The notes beneath the pieces are model-generated. The model searched no databases. It was given only the letters and a program-made list of their open reading frames with translations, and was not told the DNA's origin. Below, one piece after another: positions 47,925-59,543 of a stretch of DNA of 64,000 nt (positions are counted from its first letter, which is position 1; every line of letters begins with the position of its first letter). The translations under genes were made by a program, and so were the position numbers. The DNA is taken from the IMG/VR virus record IMGVR_UViG_3300050120_000230, positions 62,001-126,000 of that record; one strand, written 5' to 3'.

Positions 47925-49754
47925 TTAGTTCGTGAAGCTGAGAGCAGTGATCGACTGACCGGCATTCAAACGAATGCGGACGAGGATTTGATTGCCCGTT
48001 GCGGAGGTTGAAGAAGCGGTGCCGAAAGTCATCTGGAAGGTGCCCGAAGAACCGTTCATCACGGCGCCAGAAGCGCAACCAGCGGTCAATTCGCCAGCAC
48101 CACCGGGAACGCCAGCGCCCGCGTAGGCGACAAAGGCGTTCCACCATGCACCACCAACTGCGTTCGGCGAGACGCCGGAGTTGTCGGAGACGCCCGGCAG
48201 GCCGATCCACACACCGGCGTAGGTGCCGGTGACGGTGATCTTGAACTGCGAGAGCGCGGTGCGGTTGAAGGAGAACGTCACATACTGTGCAGCGTCTTGA
48301 CCCGAGAGGTTCGGACCAGCGGGCAGAAAGCCCGTGCTGTAGTTGGTCGTGTCGTTCTTGAGGGCGCCGCCGACGACCGTTGCATCCCAAGTGTGGATGG
48401 AAGCCGATTGGACCCAAGTGTTGGCTGCGAGGACCGGAGTGTTGCCCGTAGCTTGGCCGACGCGAACCGCGTTGCTGTTGCTCGGAGAAGAACCCAGACC
48501 AGTGACCGGGACGCTGAGTTCGTCAACGCGAGTGGTCGTGCCGTTCTTGACCAGAATGACGGAGGACGGAGAGGCAGTGCCACCCTGACCGTTGACGTTC
48601 GTGCCAGCCAGCGAAATCGTGCCCGAGTTGTGCACGTTCGAGGGGTTGACGCTGAGAGTCACCGTGGACATCGCCGTGGCCGTCGTGGTGTTTGCCGCGA
48701 TGGGGGTGGAGATACCGACGTTGGCGTAGGTGAAGGTCTGCGTCGAAAGGATCGAGTTGGTTGCACCAATCGACAACGGCGAACCGTTGAAGTAGGTTTG
48801 ACCAGCGAGGTTCGAAATCGAACCACCGACCGTCAGGGTAGCGCCCGTGTTGTAGTGCGGGACGCTCGACGAGAAGGCGACGGTGCCGTTCGAGAGTTGG
48901 GCCACAGTCGGCGACGTGATCGCCGGAGTTGCGACCAAGTTGTCACGAACGAACGTGACGAGGTTCGTAGAACCAGCGGCCGTATCGGTGATCTTGGCGT
49001 TGTTGACGCCGAGTTGCGTTGCCGCGCCAGAAACCGAGACGTTGACCGATTTCCAGAAGCCCGGAGTAGCGACCGGATAATCTGCTTGGCCGGAGATAAC
49101 GAGGCCGCCGTAGGTGCCGTTGTCTGCGATACCCGTCAGGGTGTGTGAACCAACCGAAGAGTTGTTGACCAGCAGCGAAAGCGTGCCGCTTTCACCCGGA
49201 CCCATGTTCGTGAACGAGTTCGAGCTTGCGAGTGTCGTTGATGTGATACGCGTGACGGCCGTACCGGCAGTGGTGCCGGTGCTGGCGTTGTCTTGCGCGC
49301 CGGAAGCCAAAACAGGCGAAGAACCAACCGAAGCGACGGTCAGTGCGTTTGCGTTCGGGAAGTTCGGCGGGGCGTTCGGGACGAGCTTGCCGAGGATTTC
49401 GTTGAGTTGGTCAACTGCTTCGGAAACCACGGTGCTGTTGGTCAGCGGGACCGCACCGGGGGACCAAGAACCGTCGCCGTAAGCAACGATGTCGCCAAGA
49501 ATAAGGTGGAAACCATCTGCAACGCCTGCGTTTGAGATGGAGTTGCTCAGGCTCGAATCGAGCGCGTTAAGCTGCGAAAGGGTAACAACGTCGGTATTCG
49601 CGACGGCGGCTGCCGCGCGAATAGTGGTCAACGAGATACCATCGGCACTCCGCGCCTCGACAACCGATCCATTCACCTTAAGACGAGGACCAGCCTTGCC
49701 AAGTTGAAGATCGGGGCCAACGCCCGAAAGTCCGAAGTTTTTTGTGTCTGCCAT
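47925..49754 (-). CDS. virion structural protein (mosaic paralog of 33473 and 25580 ORFs)
   Basis: MA..KNFG..GVG...Q.GK.G N-terminus; body ends ILVRIRLNAGQSITALSFTN; TAAATA at 49787-49792. Confidence 0.75.
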   Translation of the reverse strand: MADTKNFGLSGVGPDLQLGKAGPRLKVNGSVVEARSADGISLTTIRAAAAVANTDVVTLSQLNALDSSLSNSISNAGVADGFHLILGDIVAYGDGSWSPGAVPLTNSTVVSEAVDQLNEILGKLVPNAPPNFPNANALTVASVGSSPVLASGAQDNASTGTTAGTAVTRITSTTLASSNSFTNMGPGESGTLSLLVNNSSVGSHTLTGIADNGTYGGLVISGQADYPVATPGFWKSVNVSVSGAATQLGVNNAKITDTAAGSTNLVTFVRDNLVATPAITSPTVAQLSNGTVAFSSSVPHYNTGATLTVGGSISNLAGQTYFNGSPLSIGATNSILSTQTFTYANVGISTPIAANTTTATAMSTVTLSVNPSNVHNSGTISLAGTNVNGQGGTASPSSVILVKNGTTTRVDELSVPVTGLGSSPSNSNAVRVGQATGNTPVLAANTWVQSASIHTWDATVVGGALKNDTTNYSTGFLPAGPNLSGQDAAQYVTFSFNRTALSQFKITVTGTYAGVWIGLPGVSDNSGVSPNAVGGAWWNAFVAYAGAGVPGGAGELTAGCASGAVMNGSSGTFQMTFGTASSTSATGNQILVRIRLNAGQSITALSFTN

Positions 49755-49875: not shown

Positions 49876-49908
49876 AAAAAGAGTGGAGGGGAGCCGAAGC
49901 TCCCCCTT
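49876..49908 (-). terminator. terminator after tmRNA
   Basis: GGGGAGC-TTCG-GCTCCCC hairpin followed by CTCTTTTT on the minus strand. Confidence 0.7.
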
Positions 49909-50172
49909 GGGTAATAAGGACACCATCTCTGCCCTCAAAGGAGTTACGCGGCGAGCGCGTAGTCCATGCTAACGTTGTCGTTGGCATTTAGAAATGTGAA
50001 CTGATTGGCGGTCGTTTCTTACCGGGATTCTCGCAAACCTTTTACCGTCGCCAATCGAAAGCTGTTCGCCCCCGCACTTCCCGGTGACAACGCCGGAGAA
50101 AGATTGGTGGAGGCGCGGGGATTCGCACCCCGGTCTTGCCGACTTATTCTGATGTGGTCATCAAATCCAAGG
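49900..50172 (-). ncRNA. ssrA: circularly permuted (two-piece) tmRNA
   Basis: acceptor piece ends CGCCTCC-ACCA at 50105; coding piece starts GGGGGCG at 50073 (G3-U70 Ala identity); tag ANDNVSMDYALAA-stop at 49985-49944; outer ends approximate. Confidence 0.95.
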
Positions 50173-50188
50173 CTATTTAGCGATTTTT

Positions 50189-50428
50189 CTAGGGATAAGT
50201 CAAGCGATCTTCATCGCGGATGTGTGGATGTTTTTCCAACTCCACCAGAAGTTCGAAGATTTGTAGAACGACAAGCAGGCCATCCTTTGATCCGTCGTCG
50301 TATTGCCATTTCTTGTAGATGATCTCGCGCAGCGGATTGAGTATTTTCGCCGAAGCGTTAAGGCGGTGAAATTCGGCCTCGTCCTTGAACCCGTGACGTT
50401 GGACCATTTCTTCAATTCGATTTCTCAT
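50189..50428 (-). CDS. hypothetical protein
   Basis: start overlaps the serS stop. Confidence 0.55.
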
Positions 50429-51945
50429 AGTTTCTTCTTCTTAAAGATTTCGACCAGTCCATCGACGAAATCTTCCAAACGCCCTTCGTCAGAATACCCG
50501 CCGCACATGTTCGGCCCGTCAATCGCGTAGATCGCTTTCGCTTCCGGCGGATTCAGTTCGACCCGTTCCTCAATGCCAGCCGCTTCAAGCTTCGCGTTGA
50601 GGCGTTCGATGAATGCGTTCCGCTCGGCCGCCTCATCACCGCCAATGAGCCATCGGTCATCTCGATTCGCCGTTGGGCTGTTCATATAAGGACGAAGCGC
50701 CTCGGGGATGAGAATTGAGCCATCTTCCCGTTGGTAGGTTTCAAGGATAGCCACCAGCGCGCGCCCGACGGCCACGCCAGACCCGTTGAAGGTGTGGATG
50801 AACTTAGTGCCTTTGGTTTCCCCAGCCGGGCGATAGCGAGCGTTCATGCGGCGAGCTTGGAAATCGCCGCAGTAGGAAATGCTCGAAATCTCGCGGAAGG
50901 CATTCTGGCCGGGTAGCCACACTTCGATGTCGTAGGTTTTGGAGGCCGAGAACCCCATGTCCCCGACCGACAGAAGCATGACGCGATAGTGCAACCCCAG
51001 CGCCTTCAGCATGTGCTCGACACTGCCGAGCATTCGCTCGTGTTCCATTTCGTGAAGAGCCACTTCCTCGGACACGAGTGAGACGAGTTCGACCTTGTTG
51101 AACTGATGCTGCCGGATCATCCCTCGCGTGTCGCGCCCGGCCGAACCCGCTTCCGCACGGAAGCAGGGCGTCAGGGCACAATAGCGCCCGAGTTCACCCC
51201 AGTGTAGCACGCTGTCGCGCACCATGTTCGTCAGGGACACTTCCGCCGTTGGGATCAGATAGCGGCCGTCCGTTGTCTTGAAGAGGTCTTCTTCGAACTT
51301 GGGAAGCTGCCCGGTGCCGAACATCGACTCTTCGCGGACCAACAGCGGCGGCGCCACTTCGGTGTATCCGTTATTTTCCGTGTGGAAATCGAGCATGAAT
51401 TGCCCGAGCGCACGTTCTAGCCGGGCCATTTTCCCTTTCAGGAAAACGAAGCGCGCGCCAGACACCTTGGCTCCGGTCTCGAAATCCATGCCGAGGGGTT
51501 CACCGAGATCGAAGTGTTCTTTCGGTGTGAAAGAAAACGACGGTTTCACACCTTCACGGCGAATCTCAATGTTGTGATCCGCGTCGGGTCCGAGTGGCAC
51601 GCCCTTCATTGGCAAGTTCGGCAGGCGAGACAGATGGTGCATCACGACTCGATGGTCTTCTTCTACCTGCGGGGTGAGTTTTTCGATGTCGGCTTTGACG
51701 GTGACCATCTCGGCCTTCAACGCCTCCACGATCTCCATGGCGGCCTTGTCGCGCATCAACTGCCCGATCTCACCGGAGATCGCATTGCGACGCTGCTGAG
51801 CCTTCTCAAGAGCCTGTAGACCGTTCCTGTGCCGGGCATCCGCCATCAGCAACAGCTTGATGAGCGTTGGGCTTTCCAAGCGATAGTGCAGGCGGGAAAT
51901 AACCTCGCCTTGATTCTCGCGGATATAATTCAGGTCAAGCATCAA
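50425..51945 (-). CDS. serS: seryl-tRNA synthetase with C-terminal extension
   Basis: N-terminal coiled-coil arm, [49 protein letters not shown]. Confidence 0.95.
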
Positions 51946-56600: not shown

Positions 56601-59543
56601 ATGGCTACACTCGTTTCACCGGGCGTCGATGTCGAAATCATTGACGAATCGTTCTATGGCGGCGCTGGTCCGGGCACCGTTCCGCTCGTCGTTTTCGCGA
56701 CCGCAGCGAACAAGGCATCTCCTTCGGGAACCGGAATTGCCCCCTATACCGCTCCTTCCCAAGCAGGAAAGCTCTTCCTTGCGACTTCGCAACGTGAGTT
56801 GATCCAGAACTTCGGCACCCCGAACTTCAAGACTGTTCAGGGCACCCCGGTTCATGGCTACGAACTGAACGAATACGGGCTGCACGCAGCCTATCAGTTC
56901 CTCGGTATCTCGAACCGCTGCTACGTTCTGCGCGCAGACATTGACATGTCTCAGCTTGAGGCATCTTCCACGGCTCCGGTCGCCCCGCCGCTTCCCGGCA
57001 CCTACTGGCTCGACCTGACCCAAACCCAATTCGGTATCTTCCAGTCGAACGGTAACCCGTCGTCTGGTCTGGCTTGGGAAACGCAACCGACGCTCGCCGC
57101 GACCGCTGGCAACATCACCACGACGATGGATGACGTGGACGTTCCGTCCGCTTCTTTCGGCGCGGATGGCCAATTCGCTGTCGTCGTCACCATGTCGAAC
57201 AATCTGATCTATGAAAAGCTGAACGGTGCATGGCTGCAAGTCGGTTCGACTGCTTGGGCCGCCGCGCGCCCGACAACGGTCACCGGCCGCTCGAACCCGA
57301 GCCTGATCGCCACGACCGACACCTTCGAGATCAATGGTCACACGGTTGCATTCGATCAGATTTGGGACGGCACCGCCTACACCATTCAAGGCACTGGCGC
57401 CCTTTCGGAAATCGTCACGAACATCAACGCTGCTGCTATCGCGAACATCGTCGCCACCGTCTCCGGCGCTGGCGCTCTGGTTATTCGCGAATCGGCTGGT
57501 GGGAACATCGTTCTCAGCGCCCTGAACGGCACCCCGCTGACCACGCTCGGTTTGGCTCCCGGCCTGACGGCTGGCGTCACCGTTGACCAAACCAACACTC
57601 CGCAATACCCGGCCAACCGTGCCGCAGGTTCGGTGTGGGTCAAGGGTAATCCGCCGAACCATGGTGCAAGCTGGAAAGTCAAGCTTTGGAACGCAACGGC
57701 TGGTGCATTCGTCACCGTCCCGGCTCCGTTCTACCCGTTCAACTCTATCCTGAGCGACGGCAACTCCTCGAAGGACCAAGCTGCTTCGGCCGCATTTGGC
57801 ACTATCGCAACCGGAACGATCTACGTCGGCTTCGACGCTTCCAACGGCACGCAACAACTGCGTCGTTGGAACGGCACTGGCTGGGAAAACCTGATCTATG
57901 AAGCAGGCACGATCCCGCCGACCAGCCCTCCGGCAGACGGCACTTTCTGGTATAACACCAACTTCCGCGCCGACATCATGTATGGCGATGGCAATCAGTG
58001 GCTCGGCTACGCTCGTAAGTTCACGGCAACCGATCCCGCTGGCGTTCTGATCTCGGGCTCCGCTCCGACGACCCAGTCTGACGGCACTGCTCTGGTTGAC
58101 AACGATCTGTGGATTGATTCCAGCGATCTCGAAAACTACCCGATGCTGTATCGCTACGATACGACGTTGGCCCGTTGGAACCTGATCGACAACACCGACC
58201 AAACCTCTCCGTTTGGTATCGTGTTCGCCGACGCTCGCTCGAACTCTGGCACGAACTACACCAACAACCCGCACCCCGGCACGTACAACTACGGTTCGGA
58301 ACTCTCGGTTGATATGGTGCTGTCGAACTTCCTCGAACCCGACGCGCCCGATGCACGCACCTACCCGGATGGTATGCTGCTGTTCAACACGCGTTATTCG
58401 ACGAACAATGTCAAGGAATGGAAGCCCCTCTACTTCGCGCAGGGCGGCTTTGATCCGAACACGAACTTCACCCAATCCACCTATCACAACAGCGGCAGCA
58501 ACGCGATCTTCCCGGTGCTCGGCACCACGGGTATCTGGGTCACGGCAAGCGGCAATGACGTTGACGGCACACCCTTCATGGGTCGCAAGGCCGTTCGCGT
58601 CCTGATCGTTCGCTCGCTCGAAGAGATGATTACTCTGAACGACGATATTCGTTCGGAACTTGTCTACTTCAACCTGCTCGCGGCTCCGGGTTACCCGGAA
58701 CTGATGAACGAGATGGTGACGTTGAACACCGATCAGAAGGAAGTTGCCTTCATCGTTGGTGACACTCCGATCCGTCTGACTCCCGGTGGCACCGATGTCA
58801 CTTCGTGGGCGAACAACGGTAAGAACGTTGCTTCCACTGGTGAAGACGGTCTCACCGTCGCCAACGAATACGTCGGCGTCTACTACCCGTGGGGTCTGAG
58901 CACCGATCTGAGCGGCAATGAAGTGATGATCCCGCCCAGCGCCATCGCGCTGAGCACTCTGGCCTACAACGACCAAGTTGCTTACCCGTGGTACGCCCCG
59001 GCTGGCTTCCGTCGTGGTCTCGTGACCAACGCTTCGTCGGTCGGTTACCTGACTTCGGAAGGCGAGTTCAAGCCCGTCATCCTGAACCCCGGTCAGCGCG
59101 ACGTTCTTTACACCAACAAGATCAACCCCATCGCCTACATTCCGGGCCGTGGTCTGGTGGTCTACGGTCAGAAGACGCTCAACGCGGATCAAACCGCACT
59201 CGACCGCGTCAACGTCGCCCGTCTTGCCAACTACTTGAAGTATAACCTTGACAACATCGTCAAGCCGTTCCTCTTCGAGCAGAACGATTCGCAAACTCGT
59301 GCTTCGGCTCAAGCAACCGTTTCAGGTTTCCTGAATGGTCTGGTTGGTCTGCAAGCCCTGTCTGACTACGCAGTGATCTGCGACGACTCGAACAACACTT
59401 CGAGCCGCATCGACGCGAACGAACTCTGGATCGACATCGCCATCAAGCCGCTGCACGCCATCGAGTTCATCTATATCCCGGTGCGTATTCTCAACACCGG
59501 CTCCGACCTTGCAACGGCCGTCTCACAGACAGTCTCCCTGTAA
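56601..59543 (+). CDS. contractile tail sheath protein (gp18-like)
   Basis: LVSPGV..EIIDES N-terminus; YYPW, PPS, WYAPAG.RRG, LYTNKINPI, YGQKT, DRVNVARL, FLFEQND; TAAATA at 56563-56568. Confidence 0.95.
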   Translation: MATLVSPGVDVEIIDESFYGGAGPGTVPLVVFATAANKASPSGTGIAPYTAPSQAGKLFLATSQRELIQNFGTPNFKTVQGTPVHGYELNEYGLHAAYQFLGISNRCYVLRADIDMSQLEASSTAPVAPPLPGTYWLDLTQTQFGIFQSNGNPSSGLAWETQPTLAATAGNITTTMDDVDVPSASFGADGQFAVVVTMSNNLIYEKLNGAWLQVGSTAWAAARPTTVTGRSNPSLIATTDTFEINGHTVAFDQIWDGTAYTIQGTGALSEIVTNINAAAIANIVATVSGAGALVIRESAGGNIVLSALNGTPLTTLGLAPGLTAGVTVDQTNTPQYPANRAAGSVWVKGNPPNHGASWKVKLWNATAGAFVTVPAPFYPFNSILSDGNSSKDQAASAAFGTIATGTIYVGFDASNGTQQLRRWNGTGWENLIYEAGTIPPTSPPADGTFWYNTNFRADIMYGDGNQWLGYARKFTATDPAGVLISGSAPTTQSDGTALVDNDLWIDSSDLENYPMLYRYDTTLARWNLIDNTDQTSPFGIVFADARSNSGTNYTNNPHPGTYNYGSELSVDMVLSNFLEPDAPDARTYPDGMLLFNTRYSTNNVKEWKPLYFAQGGFDPNTNFTQSTYHNSGSNAIFPVLGTTGIWVTASGNDVDGTPFMGRKAVRVLIVRSLEEMITLNDDIRSELVYFNLLAAPGYPELMNEMVTLNTDQKEVAFIVGDTPIRLTPGGTDVTSWANNGKNVASTGEDGLTVANEYVGVYYPWGLSTDLSGNEVMIPPSAIALSTLAYNDQVAYPWYAPAGFRRGLVTNASSVGYLTSEGEFKPVILNPGQRDVLYTNKINPIAYIPGRGLVVYGQKTLNADQTALDRVNVARLANYLKYNLDNIVKPFLFEQNDSQTRASAQATVSGFLNGLVGLQALSDYAVICDDSNNTSSRIDANELWIDIAIKPLHAIEFIYIPVRILNTGSDLATAVSQTVSL

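What the first reader, a model, noticed from the sequence alone, without database searches (positions are those of the whole stretch)
49900..50180. Phage-encoded two-piece (permuted) tmRNA placed under a phage late promoter
Seen: on the minus strand the CCA-ending acceptor piece precedes the GGGGGCG coding piece, separated by a 31-nt spacer with a hairpin (50074-50104). The acceptor stem has G3-U70 and the tag reads ANDNVSMDYALAA. CCTTGG/CCAAGG and AATAAG/CTTATT could pair the outer ends. TAAATA lies at 50179-50174 and a terminator follows. Known: permuted ssrA and ANDN...AA tags typify Alphaproteobacteria, and phage tmRNAs exist but are uncommon. Inference: the host is alphaproteobacterial and the phage supplies its own ribosome-rescue RNA late in infection. 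No smpB is present in this window.
Basis: partly seen in the sequence, partly recalled or inferred. Interest (0 to 1): 0.75.

Follow-up and report, generated by a model that had tools for sequence, protein, structure and literature searches.

The report
Huge-phage two-piece tmRNA gene
A huge soil/peat phage of Alphaproteobacteria carries its own intact circularly permuted tmRNA (ribosome-rescue RNA) gene; it is real and conserved, but it is a new member of a known kind, and its promoter is the type used by the phage's tRNA operons, not a "late" one.

Summary
On the minus strand at 50168-49876 lies a permuted (two-piece) tmRNA gene. Rfam scores it 123.2 bits on tmRNA_permuted (cut-off 47) and 83.2 bits on alpha_tmRNA. 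It has a G3·U70 acceptor stem, an encoded CCA, a 31-nt spacer and the tag ANDNVSMDYALAA. The window belongs to a 415-kb phage with a contractile tail and about 50 tRNAs. Six related phage contigs carry the same gene just downstream of a phage seryl-tRNA synthetase, including a complete 578-kb genome. Compensatory base changes support the P2 helices, a 3' pseudoknot and the 3' hairpin.

The proposed outer-end pairings do not covary and mostly lie outside the predicted transcript. The promoter is not "late": it is TTGACT-N18-TAAATA, a -35-bearing class that is rare in this genome and enriched at tRNA operons. Most genes use TAAATA alone, often in leaderless form.

No SmpB, AlaRS or integrase is present, so host factors must serve the RNA. 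An alphaproteobacterial host is supported. Phage two-piece tmRNAs are already documented, so novelty is modest. Processing, charging and tagging remain untested.

The parts
50198..50203 (-). -35 box TTGACT of the tmRNA promoter
   Evidence: TTGAC(T/C) is conserved at the same place in L015, L062 and L059, and TTGTGC/TTGCGC in L100/L101. The 18-nt spacer varies in sequence. The genome-wide spacer distribution peaks tightly at 17-21 nt.
   Evidence: TAAATA is the top intergenic A/T hexamer: 76 of 140 copies are intergenic, and 57 of those 76 are co-oriented within 150 nt of a gene start. It is conserved 5 nt before the RNA's first base in 6 of 7 clade members.
50105..50168 (-). Acceptor piece (64 nt): 3' strands of P2, T-arm (50132-50116), 3' acceptor strand, discriminator A and encoded CCA. 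The predicted transcription start is G50168.
   Evidence: Rfam alignment. The outer P2 helix starting at G50168 shows compensatory changes. TAAATA-N5 geometry equals that of the leaderless ATG starts.
50074..50104 (-). Intervening spacer (31 nt, small hairpin), expected to be removed by RNase P and 3' trimming
   Evidence: Its length and sequence are not conserved (31, 71, 75, 73, 16, 33 and 38 nt in the seven records), while the flanking mature segments are near-identical.
49876..50073 (-). Coding piece: 5' acceptor strand GGGGGCG, D-loop analogue, 5' strands of P2, PK1 hairpin (50024-50009), tag frame, tag-end hairpin, PK2-like pseudoknot, 3' hairpin and U-run
   Evidence: Rfam alignment, co-fold recovering the intermolecular acceptor stem, and the covariation table.
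49944..49985 (-). Tag reading frame: resume codon GCC, 13 codons reading ANDNVSMDYALAA, stop UAA
   Evidence: Relatives differ by frame-preserving indels and by synonymous Ala-codon changes in the ALAA end.
49881..49936 (-). PK2-like 3' pseudoknot. S1 is 49936-49930 with 49922-49916. S2 is 49929-49923 with 49886-49881. The hairpin 49906-49887 sits in loop 3, and the U-run 49880-49876 follows S2.
   Evidence: S1 forms 7/7 pairs in three sequences with compensatory changes. S2 complementarity is present in all five sequences compared, with different sequences. L060 lacks the hairpin but keeps S1 and S2.
50425..51945 (-). Phage seryl-tRNA synthetase, the conserved upstream neighbour of the tmRNA
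   Evidence: Pfam Seryl_tRNA_N plus tRNA-synt_2b. SerRS-tmRNA linkage occurs in 7 phage contigs.
49862..49869 (-). TATAAATA box with no -35, the promoter of the downstream tail-module gene (47925-49754)
   Evidence: It contrasts with the tmRNA promoter class.

Best explanation
This is a functional ssrA gene of a huge myovirus-type phage. It is transcribed from its own sigma-70-like promoter (TTGACT-N18-TAAATA), starting at about G50168, and it terminates at the U-run 49880-49876.

Inferred steps follow. Host RNase P cuts 5' of G50073 and host nucleases trim back to the encoded CCA. This releases a 64-nt acceptor RNA and a coding RNA of about 195 nt, which stay base-paired through the acceptor stem and P2. 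Host AlaRS charges it through G3·U70. Host SmpB and EF-Tu deliver it to ribosomes stalled on broken or non-stop mRNAs. Translation resumes at GCC and adds ANDNVSMDYALAA, whose YALAA end is a ClpXP-type degron.

The gene shares its promoter class with the phage's tRNA operons and sits beside a phage SerRS. It is therefore best read as part of a self-supplied translation kit that keeps ribosomes free and recycles amino acids while host RNA synthesis fails.

Shown: the gene, its fold, its conservation and its promoter class. Inferred: processing, charging, tagging and benefit to the phage.
For: - Family match: Rfam 123.2 and 83.2 bits.
- Conservation: the same gene occurs in six other phage contigs at 89-122 bits. 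It also occurs in five isolated Dolichocephalovirinae at 60-88 bits.
- Selection on a processed RNA: the mature segments are conserved while the spacer varies from 16 to 75 nt.
- Covariation: compensatory changes occur in P2a, outer P2, PK2-S1, the tag-end hairpin and the 3' hairpin.
- Tags: they keep the ANDN start and the (L/V/I)AA end, with frame-preserving indels and synonymous changes.
- Promoter: both boxes are conserved and the -35 class is enriched at stable-RNA operons (Fisher p=3.7e-5).
- Expression: one soil metatranscriptome contig lies at 49967-50156 with zero depth on both flanks.
- Partners absent from phages: no SmpB in the 415-kb record, in five complete relatives, or in a complete 578-kb and a 97%-complete 561-kb sister genome. 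No AlaRS in the 415-kb record.
- Context: about 50 tRNAs plus SerRS.
Against: - There are no direct data on processing, alanylation, SmpB binding or tagging.
- The only RNA contig spans the spacer. It could be precursor or contaminating DNA, and its depth is only 2.5.
- The second stem of PK1 is short (4-5 bp) and shows no covariation.
- The middle part of P2 pairs poorly.
- The thermodynamic fold alone is unremarkable (z = -1.9) and does not recover P2.
- The record is only about 72% complete, so an smpB elsewhere in this particular genome is not strictly excluded.
Confidence: 0.72

Rival explanations
1. Competitor or re-router. The phage RNA competes with host tmRNA for SmpB so that rescued proteins receive the phage's tag rather than the host's. 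This would change their fate or damp a host response that senses trans-translation. It would not simply add rescue capacity.
For: - The phage brings no SmpB, so it must compete for the host's.
- Tags differ between phage lineages in their middle part.
- A tRNA-like-domain-only phage tmRNA (DS6A) inhibits host tmRNA (PMC4131195).
Against: - The tag keeps both ends typical of bacterial degradation tags, ANDN at the start and ALAA at the end, so the fate is probably the same as for the host tag.
- The full coding piece and pseudoknots are conserved, which is unnecessary for a mere SmpB sponge.
Confidence: 0.12
2. Coupling to stop-codon readthrough. The phage's class-II tRNA with anticodon CUA, possibly charged by the phage SerRS, causes amber readthrough. 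This creates non-stop complexes, and the phage tmRNA exists to clear them.
For: - A tRNA(CUA) with a long variable arm lies at genome 373385-373472, next to tRNA-Ser.
- SerRS is the conserved neighbour of the tmRNA in 7 contigs.
- That suppressor tRNAs raise tmRNA tagging in E. coli is my own recollection and was not checked here.
Against: - TAG still ends 122 of 572 crude gene calls, and no recoding signal was seen.
- The tRNA(CUA) was not checked in the sister genomes.
- Dolichocephalovirinae carry a tmRNA without this linkage.
Confidence: 0.08
3. Passive cargo. The gene is a recently captured host ssrA, or an integration-site (attP-type) remnant, with no role in infection.
For: tmRNA genes are common integration targets, and fragments of them occur in prophages (PMC9004378).
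Against: - It is a complete gene with its own conserved promoter and terminator.
- It is present in at least 7 divergent phage contigs (SerRS identity 51-77%) with covariation, which means long-term purifying selection.
- No tyrosine integrase is present in the 415 kb.
- No identical bacterial copy was found by the TLD pattern scan.
Confidence: 0.05

Closest known systems
Alphaproteobacterial two-piece tmRNA (Rfam RF01849 alpha_tmRNA / RF04321 tmRNA_permuted; prototype Caulobacter crescentus ssrA, Keiler, Shapiro & Williams 2000, cited in PMC9004378)
   Same: - Permuted gene order.
- G3·U70 acceptor stem and encoded CCA.
- T-arm and P2.
- PK1 hairpin.
- ANDN...AA tag.
- A 3' H-type pseudoknot.
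   Different: - It is encoded by a phage with no linked smpB.
- It is very compact: 225 nt from the first base to the stop codon, with a 31-nt spacer.
- In the window, L062 and L059, loop 3 of the 3' pseudoknot reads CCUUAU(U/C).CCCAA instead of the alphaproteobacterial CUGGCAACAGAA. It also carries an inserted GC hairpin, so the alpha model stops matching at position 270 of 355.
Two-piece tmRNAs of other phages: OM43 phage Melnitz and SAR11 myophages (PMC9004378), and the unannotated or partly annotated tmRNAs of phiCbK-like Dolichocephalovirinae
   Same: - A phage-borne permuted ssrA without smpB.
- Alphaproteobacterial type.
- Own promoter.
- A translation-related neighbourhood (tRNAs in phiCbK-like phages).
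   Different: - No glutamine riboswitch was detected (the Rfam scan found only the tmRNA families).
- It is linked to SerRS and the tail module, not to the tRNA array.
- The tag starts with a single Ala (ANDN), against AANDN in the Caulobacter and Brevundimonas phages.
- The source is soil or peat, not marine.
tmRNAs of huge phages (Al-Shayeb et al. 2020, PMC7162821)
   Same: A genome over 400 kb with a large tRNA set, an aminoacyl-tRNA synthetase and a tmRNA.
   Different: That survey used ARAGORN. ARAGORN misses this gene and 5 of the 9 related loci tested. Some huge phages there also carry SmpB, whereas this clade does not.

Membership tests
Permuted (two-piece) tmRNA, alphaproteobacterial type | Score above the curated thresholds of the family covariance models | tested here: met
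   RF04321 scores 123.2 bits (cut-off 47) over the full model 1-213. RF01849 scores 83.2 bits (cut-off 50) and is the best of its clan.
Permuted (two-piece) tmRNA, alphaproteobacterial type | Circular permutation: the CCA-ending 3' half of the tRNA-like domain lies upstream of the 5' acceptor strand and tag frame | tested here: met
   The CCA is at 50107-50105, upstream of GGGGGCG at 50073-50067 on the minus strand.
Permuted (two-piece) tmRNA, alphaproteobacterial type | Alanine identity: a 7-bp acceptor stem with G3·U70, discriminator A and CCA | tested here: met
   The pairs are G-C, G-C, G·U, G-C, G-C, C-G and G-C. They are identical in four clade members. The intermolecular stem is recovered by co-folding.
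Permuted (two-piece) tmRNA, alphaproteobacterial type | P2 helix joining the two pieces, supported by covariation | tested here: met
   P2a-ii has four different pair sets in four sequences. Outer P2 is GGAUU/AAUCC, GAGUU/AACUC or GGUGU/ACGCC, all 5/5 paired. The middle segment is weak.
Permuted (two-piece) tmRNA, alphaproteobacterial type | Pseudoknot PK1 just upstream of the resume codon | tested here: inconclusive
   The hairpin 50024-50009 is 4/4 paired in all five sequences, with one compensatory change in L060. The candidate second stem AGAA(A)/UUCU is only 4-5 bp and invariant.
Permuted (two-piece) tmRNA, alphaproteobacterial type | Short tag frame starting at a GCN resume codon and ending in a hydrophobic ...AA degron plus a stop codon | tested here: met
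   The tag is ANDNVSMDYALAA followed by UAA. Relatives read ANDNVDMAAYALAA, ANDNFVGDFALAA, ANDNVAMDYAVAA and ANDNFAFEGYAVSA, with the frame kept throughout.
Permuted (two-piece) tmRNA, alphaproteobacterial type | Processing of one precursor into two base-paired RNAs | not testable with these tools
   The only RNA-library contig (49967-50156) spans the spacer. Variability of the spacer is indirect support only.
Trans-translation system (tmRNA with SmpB) | A dedicated SmpB partner encoded by the same genome | tested here: not met
   No PF01668 match was found in the 415-kb record, in five complete Dolichocephalovirinae, or in the complete 578-kb and 97%-complete 561-kb sister genomes. The RNA must use host SmpB (inference).
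T4-type late promoter | A TATAAATA -10 element that acts without any -35 element | tested here: not met
   The box reads GCTAAATA and has a conserved TTGACT 18 nt upstream, also conserved in relatives. True -35-less TAAATA boxes precede most protein genes, including the next tail gene.
Sigma-70-type (-35/-10) promoter | Two conserved hexamers at 16-19 nt spacing, upstream of a mapped start | tested here: inconclusive
   Both boxes and their spacing are conserved. The generic TTGACA/TATAAT scanner does not call the site, because the -10 ends in A. The transcription start is predicted, not mapped.

The most novel reading that the evidence does not exclude
The tmRNA is one element of a conserved SerRS-tmRNA module in a clade of 400-580-kb alphaproteobacterial myophages. 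These phages would run a two-tier transcription programme. A rare class of promoters with a -35 box is reserved mainly for stable RNAs (tRNA arrays and tmRNA). Dozens of -35-less TAAATA boxes fire leaderless mRNAs. In this reading the phage tmRNA is specifically needed to clear ribosomes from the readthrough or non-stop products that this programme, together with a Ser-type amber-suppressor tRNA, generates.
Probability: 0.15. Interest if true: 0.6.

Novelty: new member of a known kind. Interest (0 to 1): 0.35.

Why it matters
The finding shows that an uncultivated clade of very large soil, peat and freshwater phages supplies its own ribosome-rescue RNA while depending on host SmpB, AlaRS and ClpXP. 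That gives a concrete, testable case of partial take-over of translation quality control.

The practical lesson is that ARAGORN-based annotation misses this gene here and in several relatives. It is unannotated in the GenBank records of phiCbK, CcrColossus and CcrSC, so phage tmRNAs are under-counted. The Rfam RF04321 model finds them.

The promoter analysis also gives a ready hypothesis for how this phage separates stable-RNA expression from mRNA expression.

Tried and rejected
- ARAGORN on the window, on the genome and at lowered thresholds gave no valid tmRNA call. At -ps90 and -ps80 it gave only a spurious one.
- The generic sigma-70 scanner found no promoter, because it requires T at position 6 of the -10 hexamer.
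- Megablast of 16 kb against isolated phages found nothing.
- Host inference through bacterial tmRNAs failed.
  - The tRNA-like 3' half occurs verbatim in Acidobacteriota and other phyla, so it is uninformative.
  - A phylum-wide scan from one handle gave only short T-arm hits and no taxon names.
- An exact 19-mer of the coding piece in metagenome contigs gave four chance hits without any tmRNA, plus the already known 52-kb contig.
- Thermodynamic folding alone does not recover P2 and gives only z = -1.9.
- The 570-kb NCBI contig could not be searched whole because it is not held.
- My recollection that Gill et al. 2012 reported a tmRNA in phiCbK was wrong: that paper does not contain the word.
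- A test for TAG recoding found no clear signal.

Full report
**What is there**

Reading the minus strand shows the elements in this order:
- TTGACT at 50203-50198.
- An 18-nt spacer.
- TAAATA at 50179-50174.
- Five bases, then GGAUUUG beginning at 50168.
- A T-arm at 50132-50116.
- The 3' acceptor strand CGCCUCC, discriminator A and CCA, ending at 50105.
- A 31-nt spacer at 50104-50074 with a small hairpin.
- GGGGGCG at 50073-50067.
- A tag frame from GCC at 49985 to UAA at 49946-49944.
- A GC hairpin at 49906-49887 and a U-run at 49880-49876.

Rfam places the stretch 50168-49944 in RF04321 tmRNA_permuted. It scores 123.2 bits against a cut-off of 47, with E=1.3e-23, over the whole model. The stretch 50181-49944 matches RF01849 alpha_tmRNA at 83.2 bits. 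ARAGORN finds no tmRNA in the window or the genome, even at relaxed thresholds.

**Whose genome**

The window is bases 62001-126000 of a 415,409-bp IMG/VR virus record that CheckV rates about 72% complete.
- It carries about 50 tRNA genes.
- It has a 980-aa tail sheath at 56601-59543.
- It has a seryl-tRNA synthetase directly upstream of the tmRNA, at 50425-51945.
- The gene downstream, at 47925-49754, is a tail-fibre-like protein. It is 53-57% identical to proteins of Caulobacter and Brevundimonas Dolichocephalovirinae, and matches more weakly in Agrobacterium and Sinorhizobium phages.

The phage is therefore a huge contractile-tailed phage, not a member of that siphovirus subfamily, but it shares genes with it. 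Run searches indicate a peat metagenome as the probable source, with relatives in soil and freshwater.

**Conservation**

All five isolated Dolichocephalovirinae tested have a permuted tmRNA at 60-88 bits: phiCbK, CcrColossus, CcrSC, Bajun and Domovoi. There it sits in tRNA clusters. It is not annotated in the four GenBank records I inspected.

Closer relatives of the window's gene sit immediately downstream of a phage SerRS in six further contigs:

| Locus | Contig | tmRNA score (bits) |
|---|---|---|
| L015 | 52-kb IMG/VR fragment | 118.2 |
| L062 | 30 kb | 117.7 |
| L059 | 570 kb | 113.9 |
| L060 | 163 kb | 89.1 |
| L100 | 578 kb, direct terminal repeats, CheckV 100% | 121.7 |
| L101 | 21 kb | 100.9 |

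The SerRS identities of these contigs to the window run from 77% down to 51%, so the linkage is old.

**Structure by comparison**

Between the window and its relatives the mature segments are nearly unchanged, while the spacer is 16-75 nt long and unrelated in sequence. That is the pattern expected if only the processed pieces are under selection.

A helix-by-helix count in four close sequences gives:
- The acceptor stem is invariant, including G3·U70.
- P2a-ii has four different standard pair sets.
- P2a-i has one C-G to G-C swap.
- The outermost P2 helix is GGAUU/AAUCC, GAGUU/AACUC or GGUGU/ACGCC, always 5/5 paired.
- A tag-end hairpin and the 3' hairpin both show compensatory swaps.

After the tag there is an H-type pseudoknot like the one in the alphaproteobacterial consensus. 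S1 is 49936-49930 with 49922-49916. The bases between the S1 strands pair with the 5-7 bases just before the U-run (S2). The paired sequences differ between records: GAG-UGG/CCA-CUC, GGUGG/CCACC, GCGGA/UCCGC and GGUGGG/CCCAUC. L060 lacks the GC hairpin but keeps S1 and S2, so the "terminator" hairpin lies in loop 3 of this pseudoknot.

PK1 is only half supported: its hairpin is conserved, but the second stem is short and invariant. Free-energy folding alone is not informative, with z = -1.9 and P2 not recovered, although the intermolecular acceptor stem is.

CCUUGG/CCAAGG pairs 6/6 in the window but 3/6, 4/6 and 5/6 in three relatives, with no double change. AAUAAG/CUUAUU pairs 6/6, 3/6, 5/6 and 3/6. 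CCUUGG (50172-50167) lies mostly upstream of the predicted first base, and its GG belongs to the covarying outer P2 helix. I reject both pairings.

**The promoter**

- TAAATA is this phage's general -10-like element.
  - It is the most intergenic of all A4T2 hexamers, with 76 of 140 copies in about 11% of the genome.
  - 57 of the 76 intergenic copies have a co-oriented gene start within 150 nt.
  - At least 47 of the 140 copies are followed by ATG after exactly 4-5 nt, which implies leaderless mRNAs.
- By the same geometry (TAAATA, then 5 nt, then G) the tmRNA transcript should start at G50168. That is model position 1 and the first base of the outer P2 helix. The same spacing holds in L015, L062, L059, L100 and L101.
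- The tmRNA box is distinguished by its -35 element.
  - TTGAC at 17-21 nt upstream occurs at only 12 TAAATA boxes, with a sharp spacer peak.
  - Five of the 12 precede stable-RNA genes: four tRNA arrays and the tmRNA.
  - Put another way, 5 of 7 TAAATA promoters in front of RNA clusters have the -35 box, against 7 of 133 others (Fisher p=3.7e-5).
  - The -35 box is conserved in the relatives while the spacer sequence varies.
- The tail gene just downstream uses TATAAATA without a -35 box.

The "late promoter" reading is therefore not supported. The tmRNA shares the promoter class of the tRNA operons. From my own knowledge, not tested here, the pair CTTGAC/CTAAAT resembles the housekeeping promoter consensus reported for rhizobia. 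Timing remains unknown.

**Expression**

One soil metatranscriptome holds a 192-nt contig on 49967-50156 with 3 mismatches, and nothing on the 367 and 344 nt of flanks laid with it. This suggests the gene is far more abundant as RNA than its neighbours. However, the depth is 2.5, the contig spans the spacer, and DNA carry-over cannot be excluded. Processing is not shown.

**Partners**

- No SmpB is found in the 415-kb record, in five complete Dolichocephalovirinae, or in the complete 578-kb and 97%-complete 561-kb sister genomes.
- No AlaRS and no tyrosine integrase are present in the 415-kb record.

The RNA must therefore rely on host SmpB, AlaRS, EF-Tu and proteases. An attP-type origin is unlikely.

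**Tag**

The clade's tags are:

| Locus | Tag |
|---|---|
| window | ANDNVSMDYALAA |
| L100 | ANDNVAMDYAVAA |
| L101 | VNDNVAMDYAIAA |
| L015 | ANDNVDMAAYALAA |
| L062 and L059 | ANDNFVGDFALAA |
| L060 | ANDNFAFEGYAVSA |

Indels are in multiples of three, and the ALAA codons change synonymously, so the frame is under selection as a coding sequence. The Caulobacter and Brevundimonas phage tags begin AANDN. From my own knowledge, the Caulobacter host tag also begins AANDN, and the YALAA end equals that of the E. coli tag, a ClpXP degron.

**Host**

An alphaproteobacterial host is supported by three lines of evidence:
- The alpha-type tmRNA model fits best.
- The named SerRS neighbours are all Hyphomicrobiales at 57-59% identity. 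A 60%-identical copy sits in a typical bacterial tatABC-serS-surE-pcm context.
- The tail-fibre-like gene is shared with Caulobacterales phages.

The order of the host is not resolved. Attempts through bacterial tmRNAs failed.

**What is known already**

- Phage tmRNAs have been catalogued since the mycobacteriophage cases (PMC4131195).
- Huge phages with tmRNAs and sometimes SmpB were reported in 2020, using ARAGORN (PMC7162821).
- Melnitz and other marine phages carry two-piece tmRNAs. A survey found 53 unique two-piece forms among 18,146 phage genomes (PMC9004378).
- The 2025 tmRNA database lists 79 phage sequences and introduced RF04321 (PMC11915505).
- A 2026 announcement lists one tmRNA in Caulobacter phage Shash (PMC13459779).
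- By contrast, the phiCbK genome paper does not mention tmRNA. The Brevundimonas phage paper states that none was detected (PMC10070969). In my hands ARAGORN finds 4 of the 10 loci.

**Verdict**

This is a genuine, conserved, probably functional phage ssrA. It is a new member of a known kind, in a little-studied clade of huge soil phages. It has a compact architecture, a conserved SerRS neighbour and a promoter of the stable-RNA class. The claim of late expression and the proposed outer-end helices should be dropped. Interest is moderate. The side observations on leaderless transcription and promoter classes are at least as interesting as the tmRNA itself.

Noticed in passing
whole genome; in the window e.g. 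49869-49862 and 49795-49790 (minus strand) before the gene 47925-49754: [C/A]TAAATA is a genome-wide promoter-like box. At least 47 of its 140 copies are followed by ATG after exactly 4-5 nt, which implies large-scale use of leaderless mRNAs by this huge phage. I found no paper describing this for the phiCbK-related phages in the held library.
   Followed up: partly
genome 162145(-), 166560(+), 268960(+), 381072(-) and window 50203(-): Full TTGAC-N17-21-TAAATA promoters are rare (12 in the genome) and enriched in front of tRNA arrays and the tmRNA (Fisher p=3.7e-5). This suggests a separate promoter class for stable RNAs.
   Followed up: partly
genome 373385-373472 (outside the window): A class-II tRNA with a long variable arm and anticodon CUA, a potential amber suppressor, lies next to tRNA-Ser(UGA). 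TAG still ends about 21% of crude gene calls, so no global recoding is evident. The phage SerRS could charge it, since SerRS does not read the anticodon (my own knowledge).
   Followed up: partly
window 50425-51945 (-): The phage seryl-tRNA synthetase carries a C-terminal extension of about 80 aa that its relatives lack (425-436 aa). The SerRS-tmRNA adjacency is conserved in 7 phage contigs with SerRS identity down to 51%.
   Followed up: partly
window 56601-59543 (+) and 47925-49754 (-): A 980-aa contractile-tail sheath marks a myovirus-type virion. Yet the 609-aa tail-fibre-like protein is 53-57% identical to proteins of siphovirus Dolichocephalovirinae. This suggests exchange of a host-recognition module across tail types.
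   Followed up: no
L012 2328-2814 (phiCbK JX163858) and L097 2110-2559 (462-kb IMG/VR contig): GOLLD RNA matches at 165 and 171 bits (cut-off 150). In phiCbK the match lies right next to the unannotated tmRNA and overlaps a tRNA-like element.
   Followed up: no
L009-L013, L015, L059, L060, L062 and the window: ARAGORN 1.2.41 calls the permuted tmRNA in only 4 of 10 loci that Rfam RF04321 scores at 60-123 bits. GenBank records of phiCbK, CcrColossus and CcrSC lack the feature.
   Followed up: yes
L060 6256-7041: In the 163-kb sister contig, a GIY-YIG (SegE-like) homing-endonuclease gene and a 178-aa gene are inserted between SerRS and the tmRNA. That copy lacks the TAAATA promoter and the 3' hairpin.
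   Followed up: no
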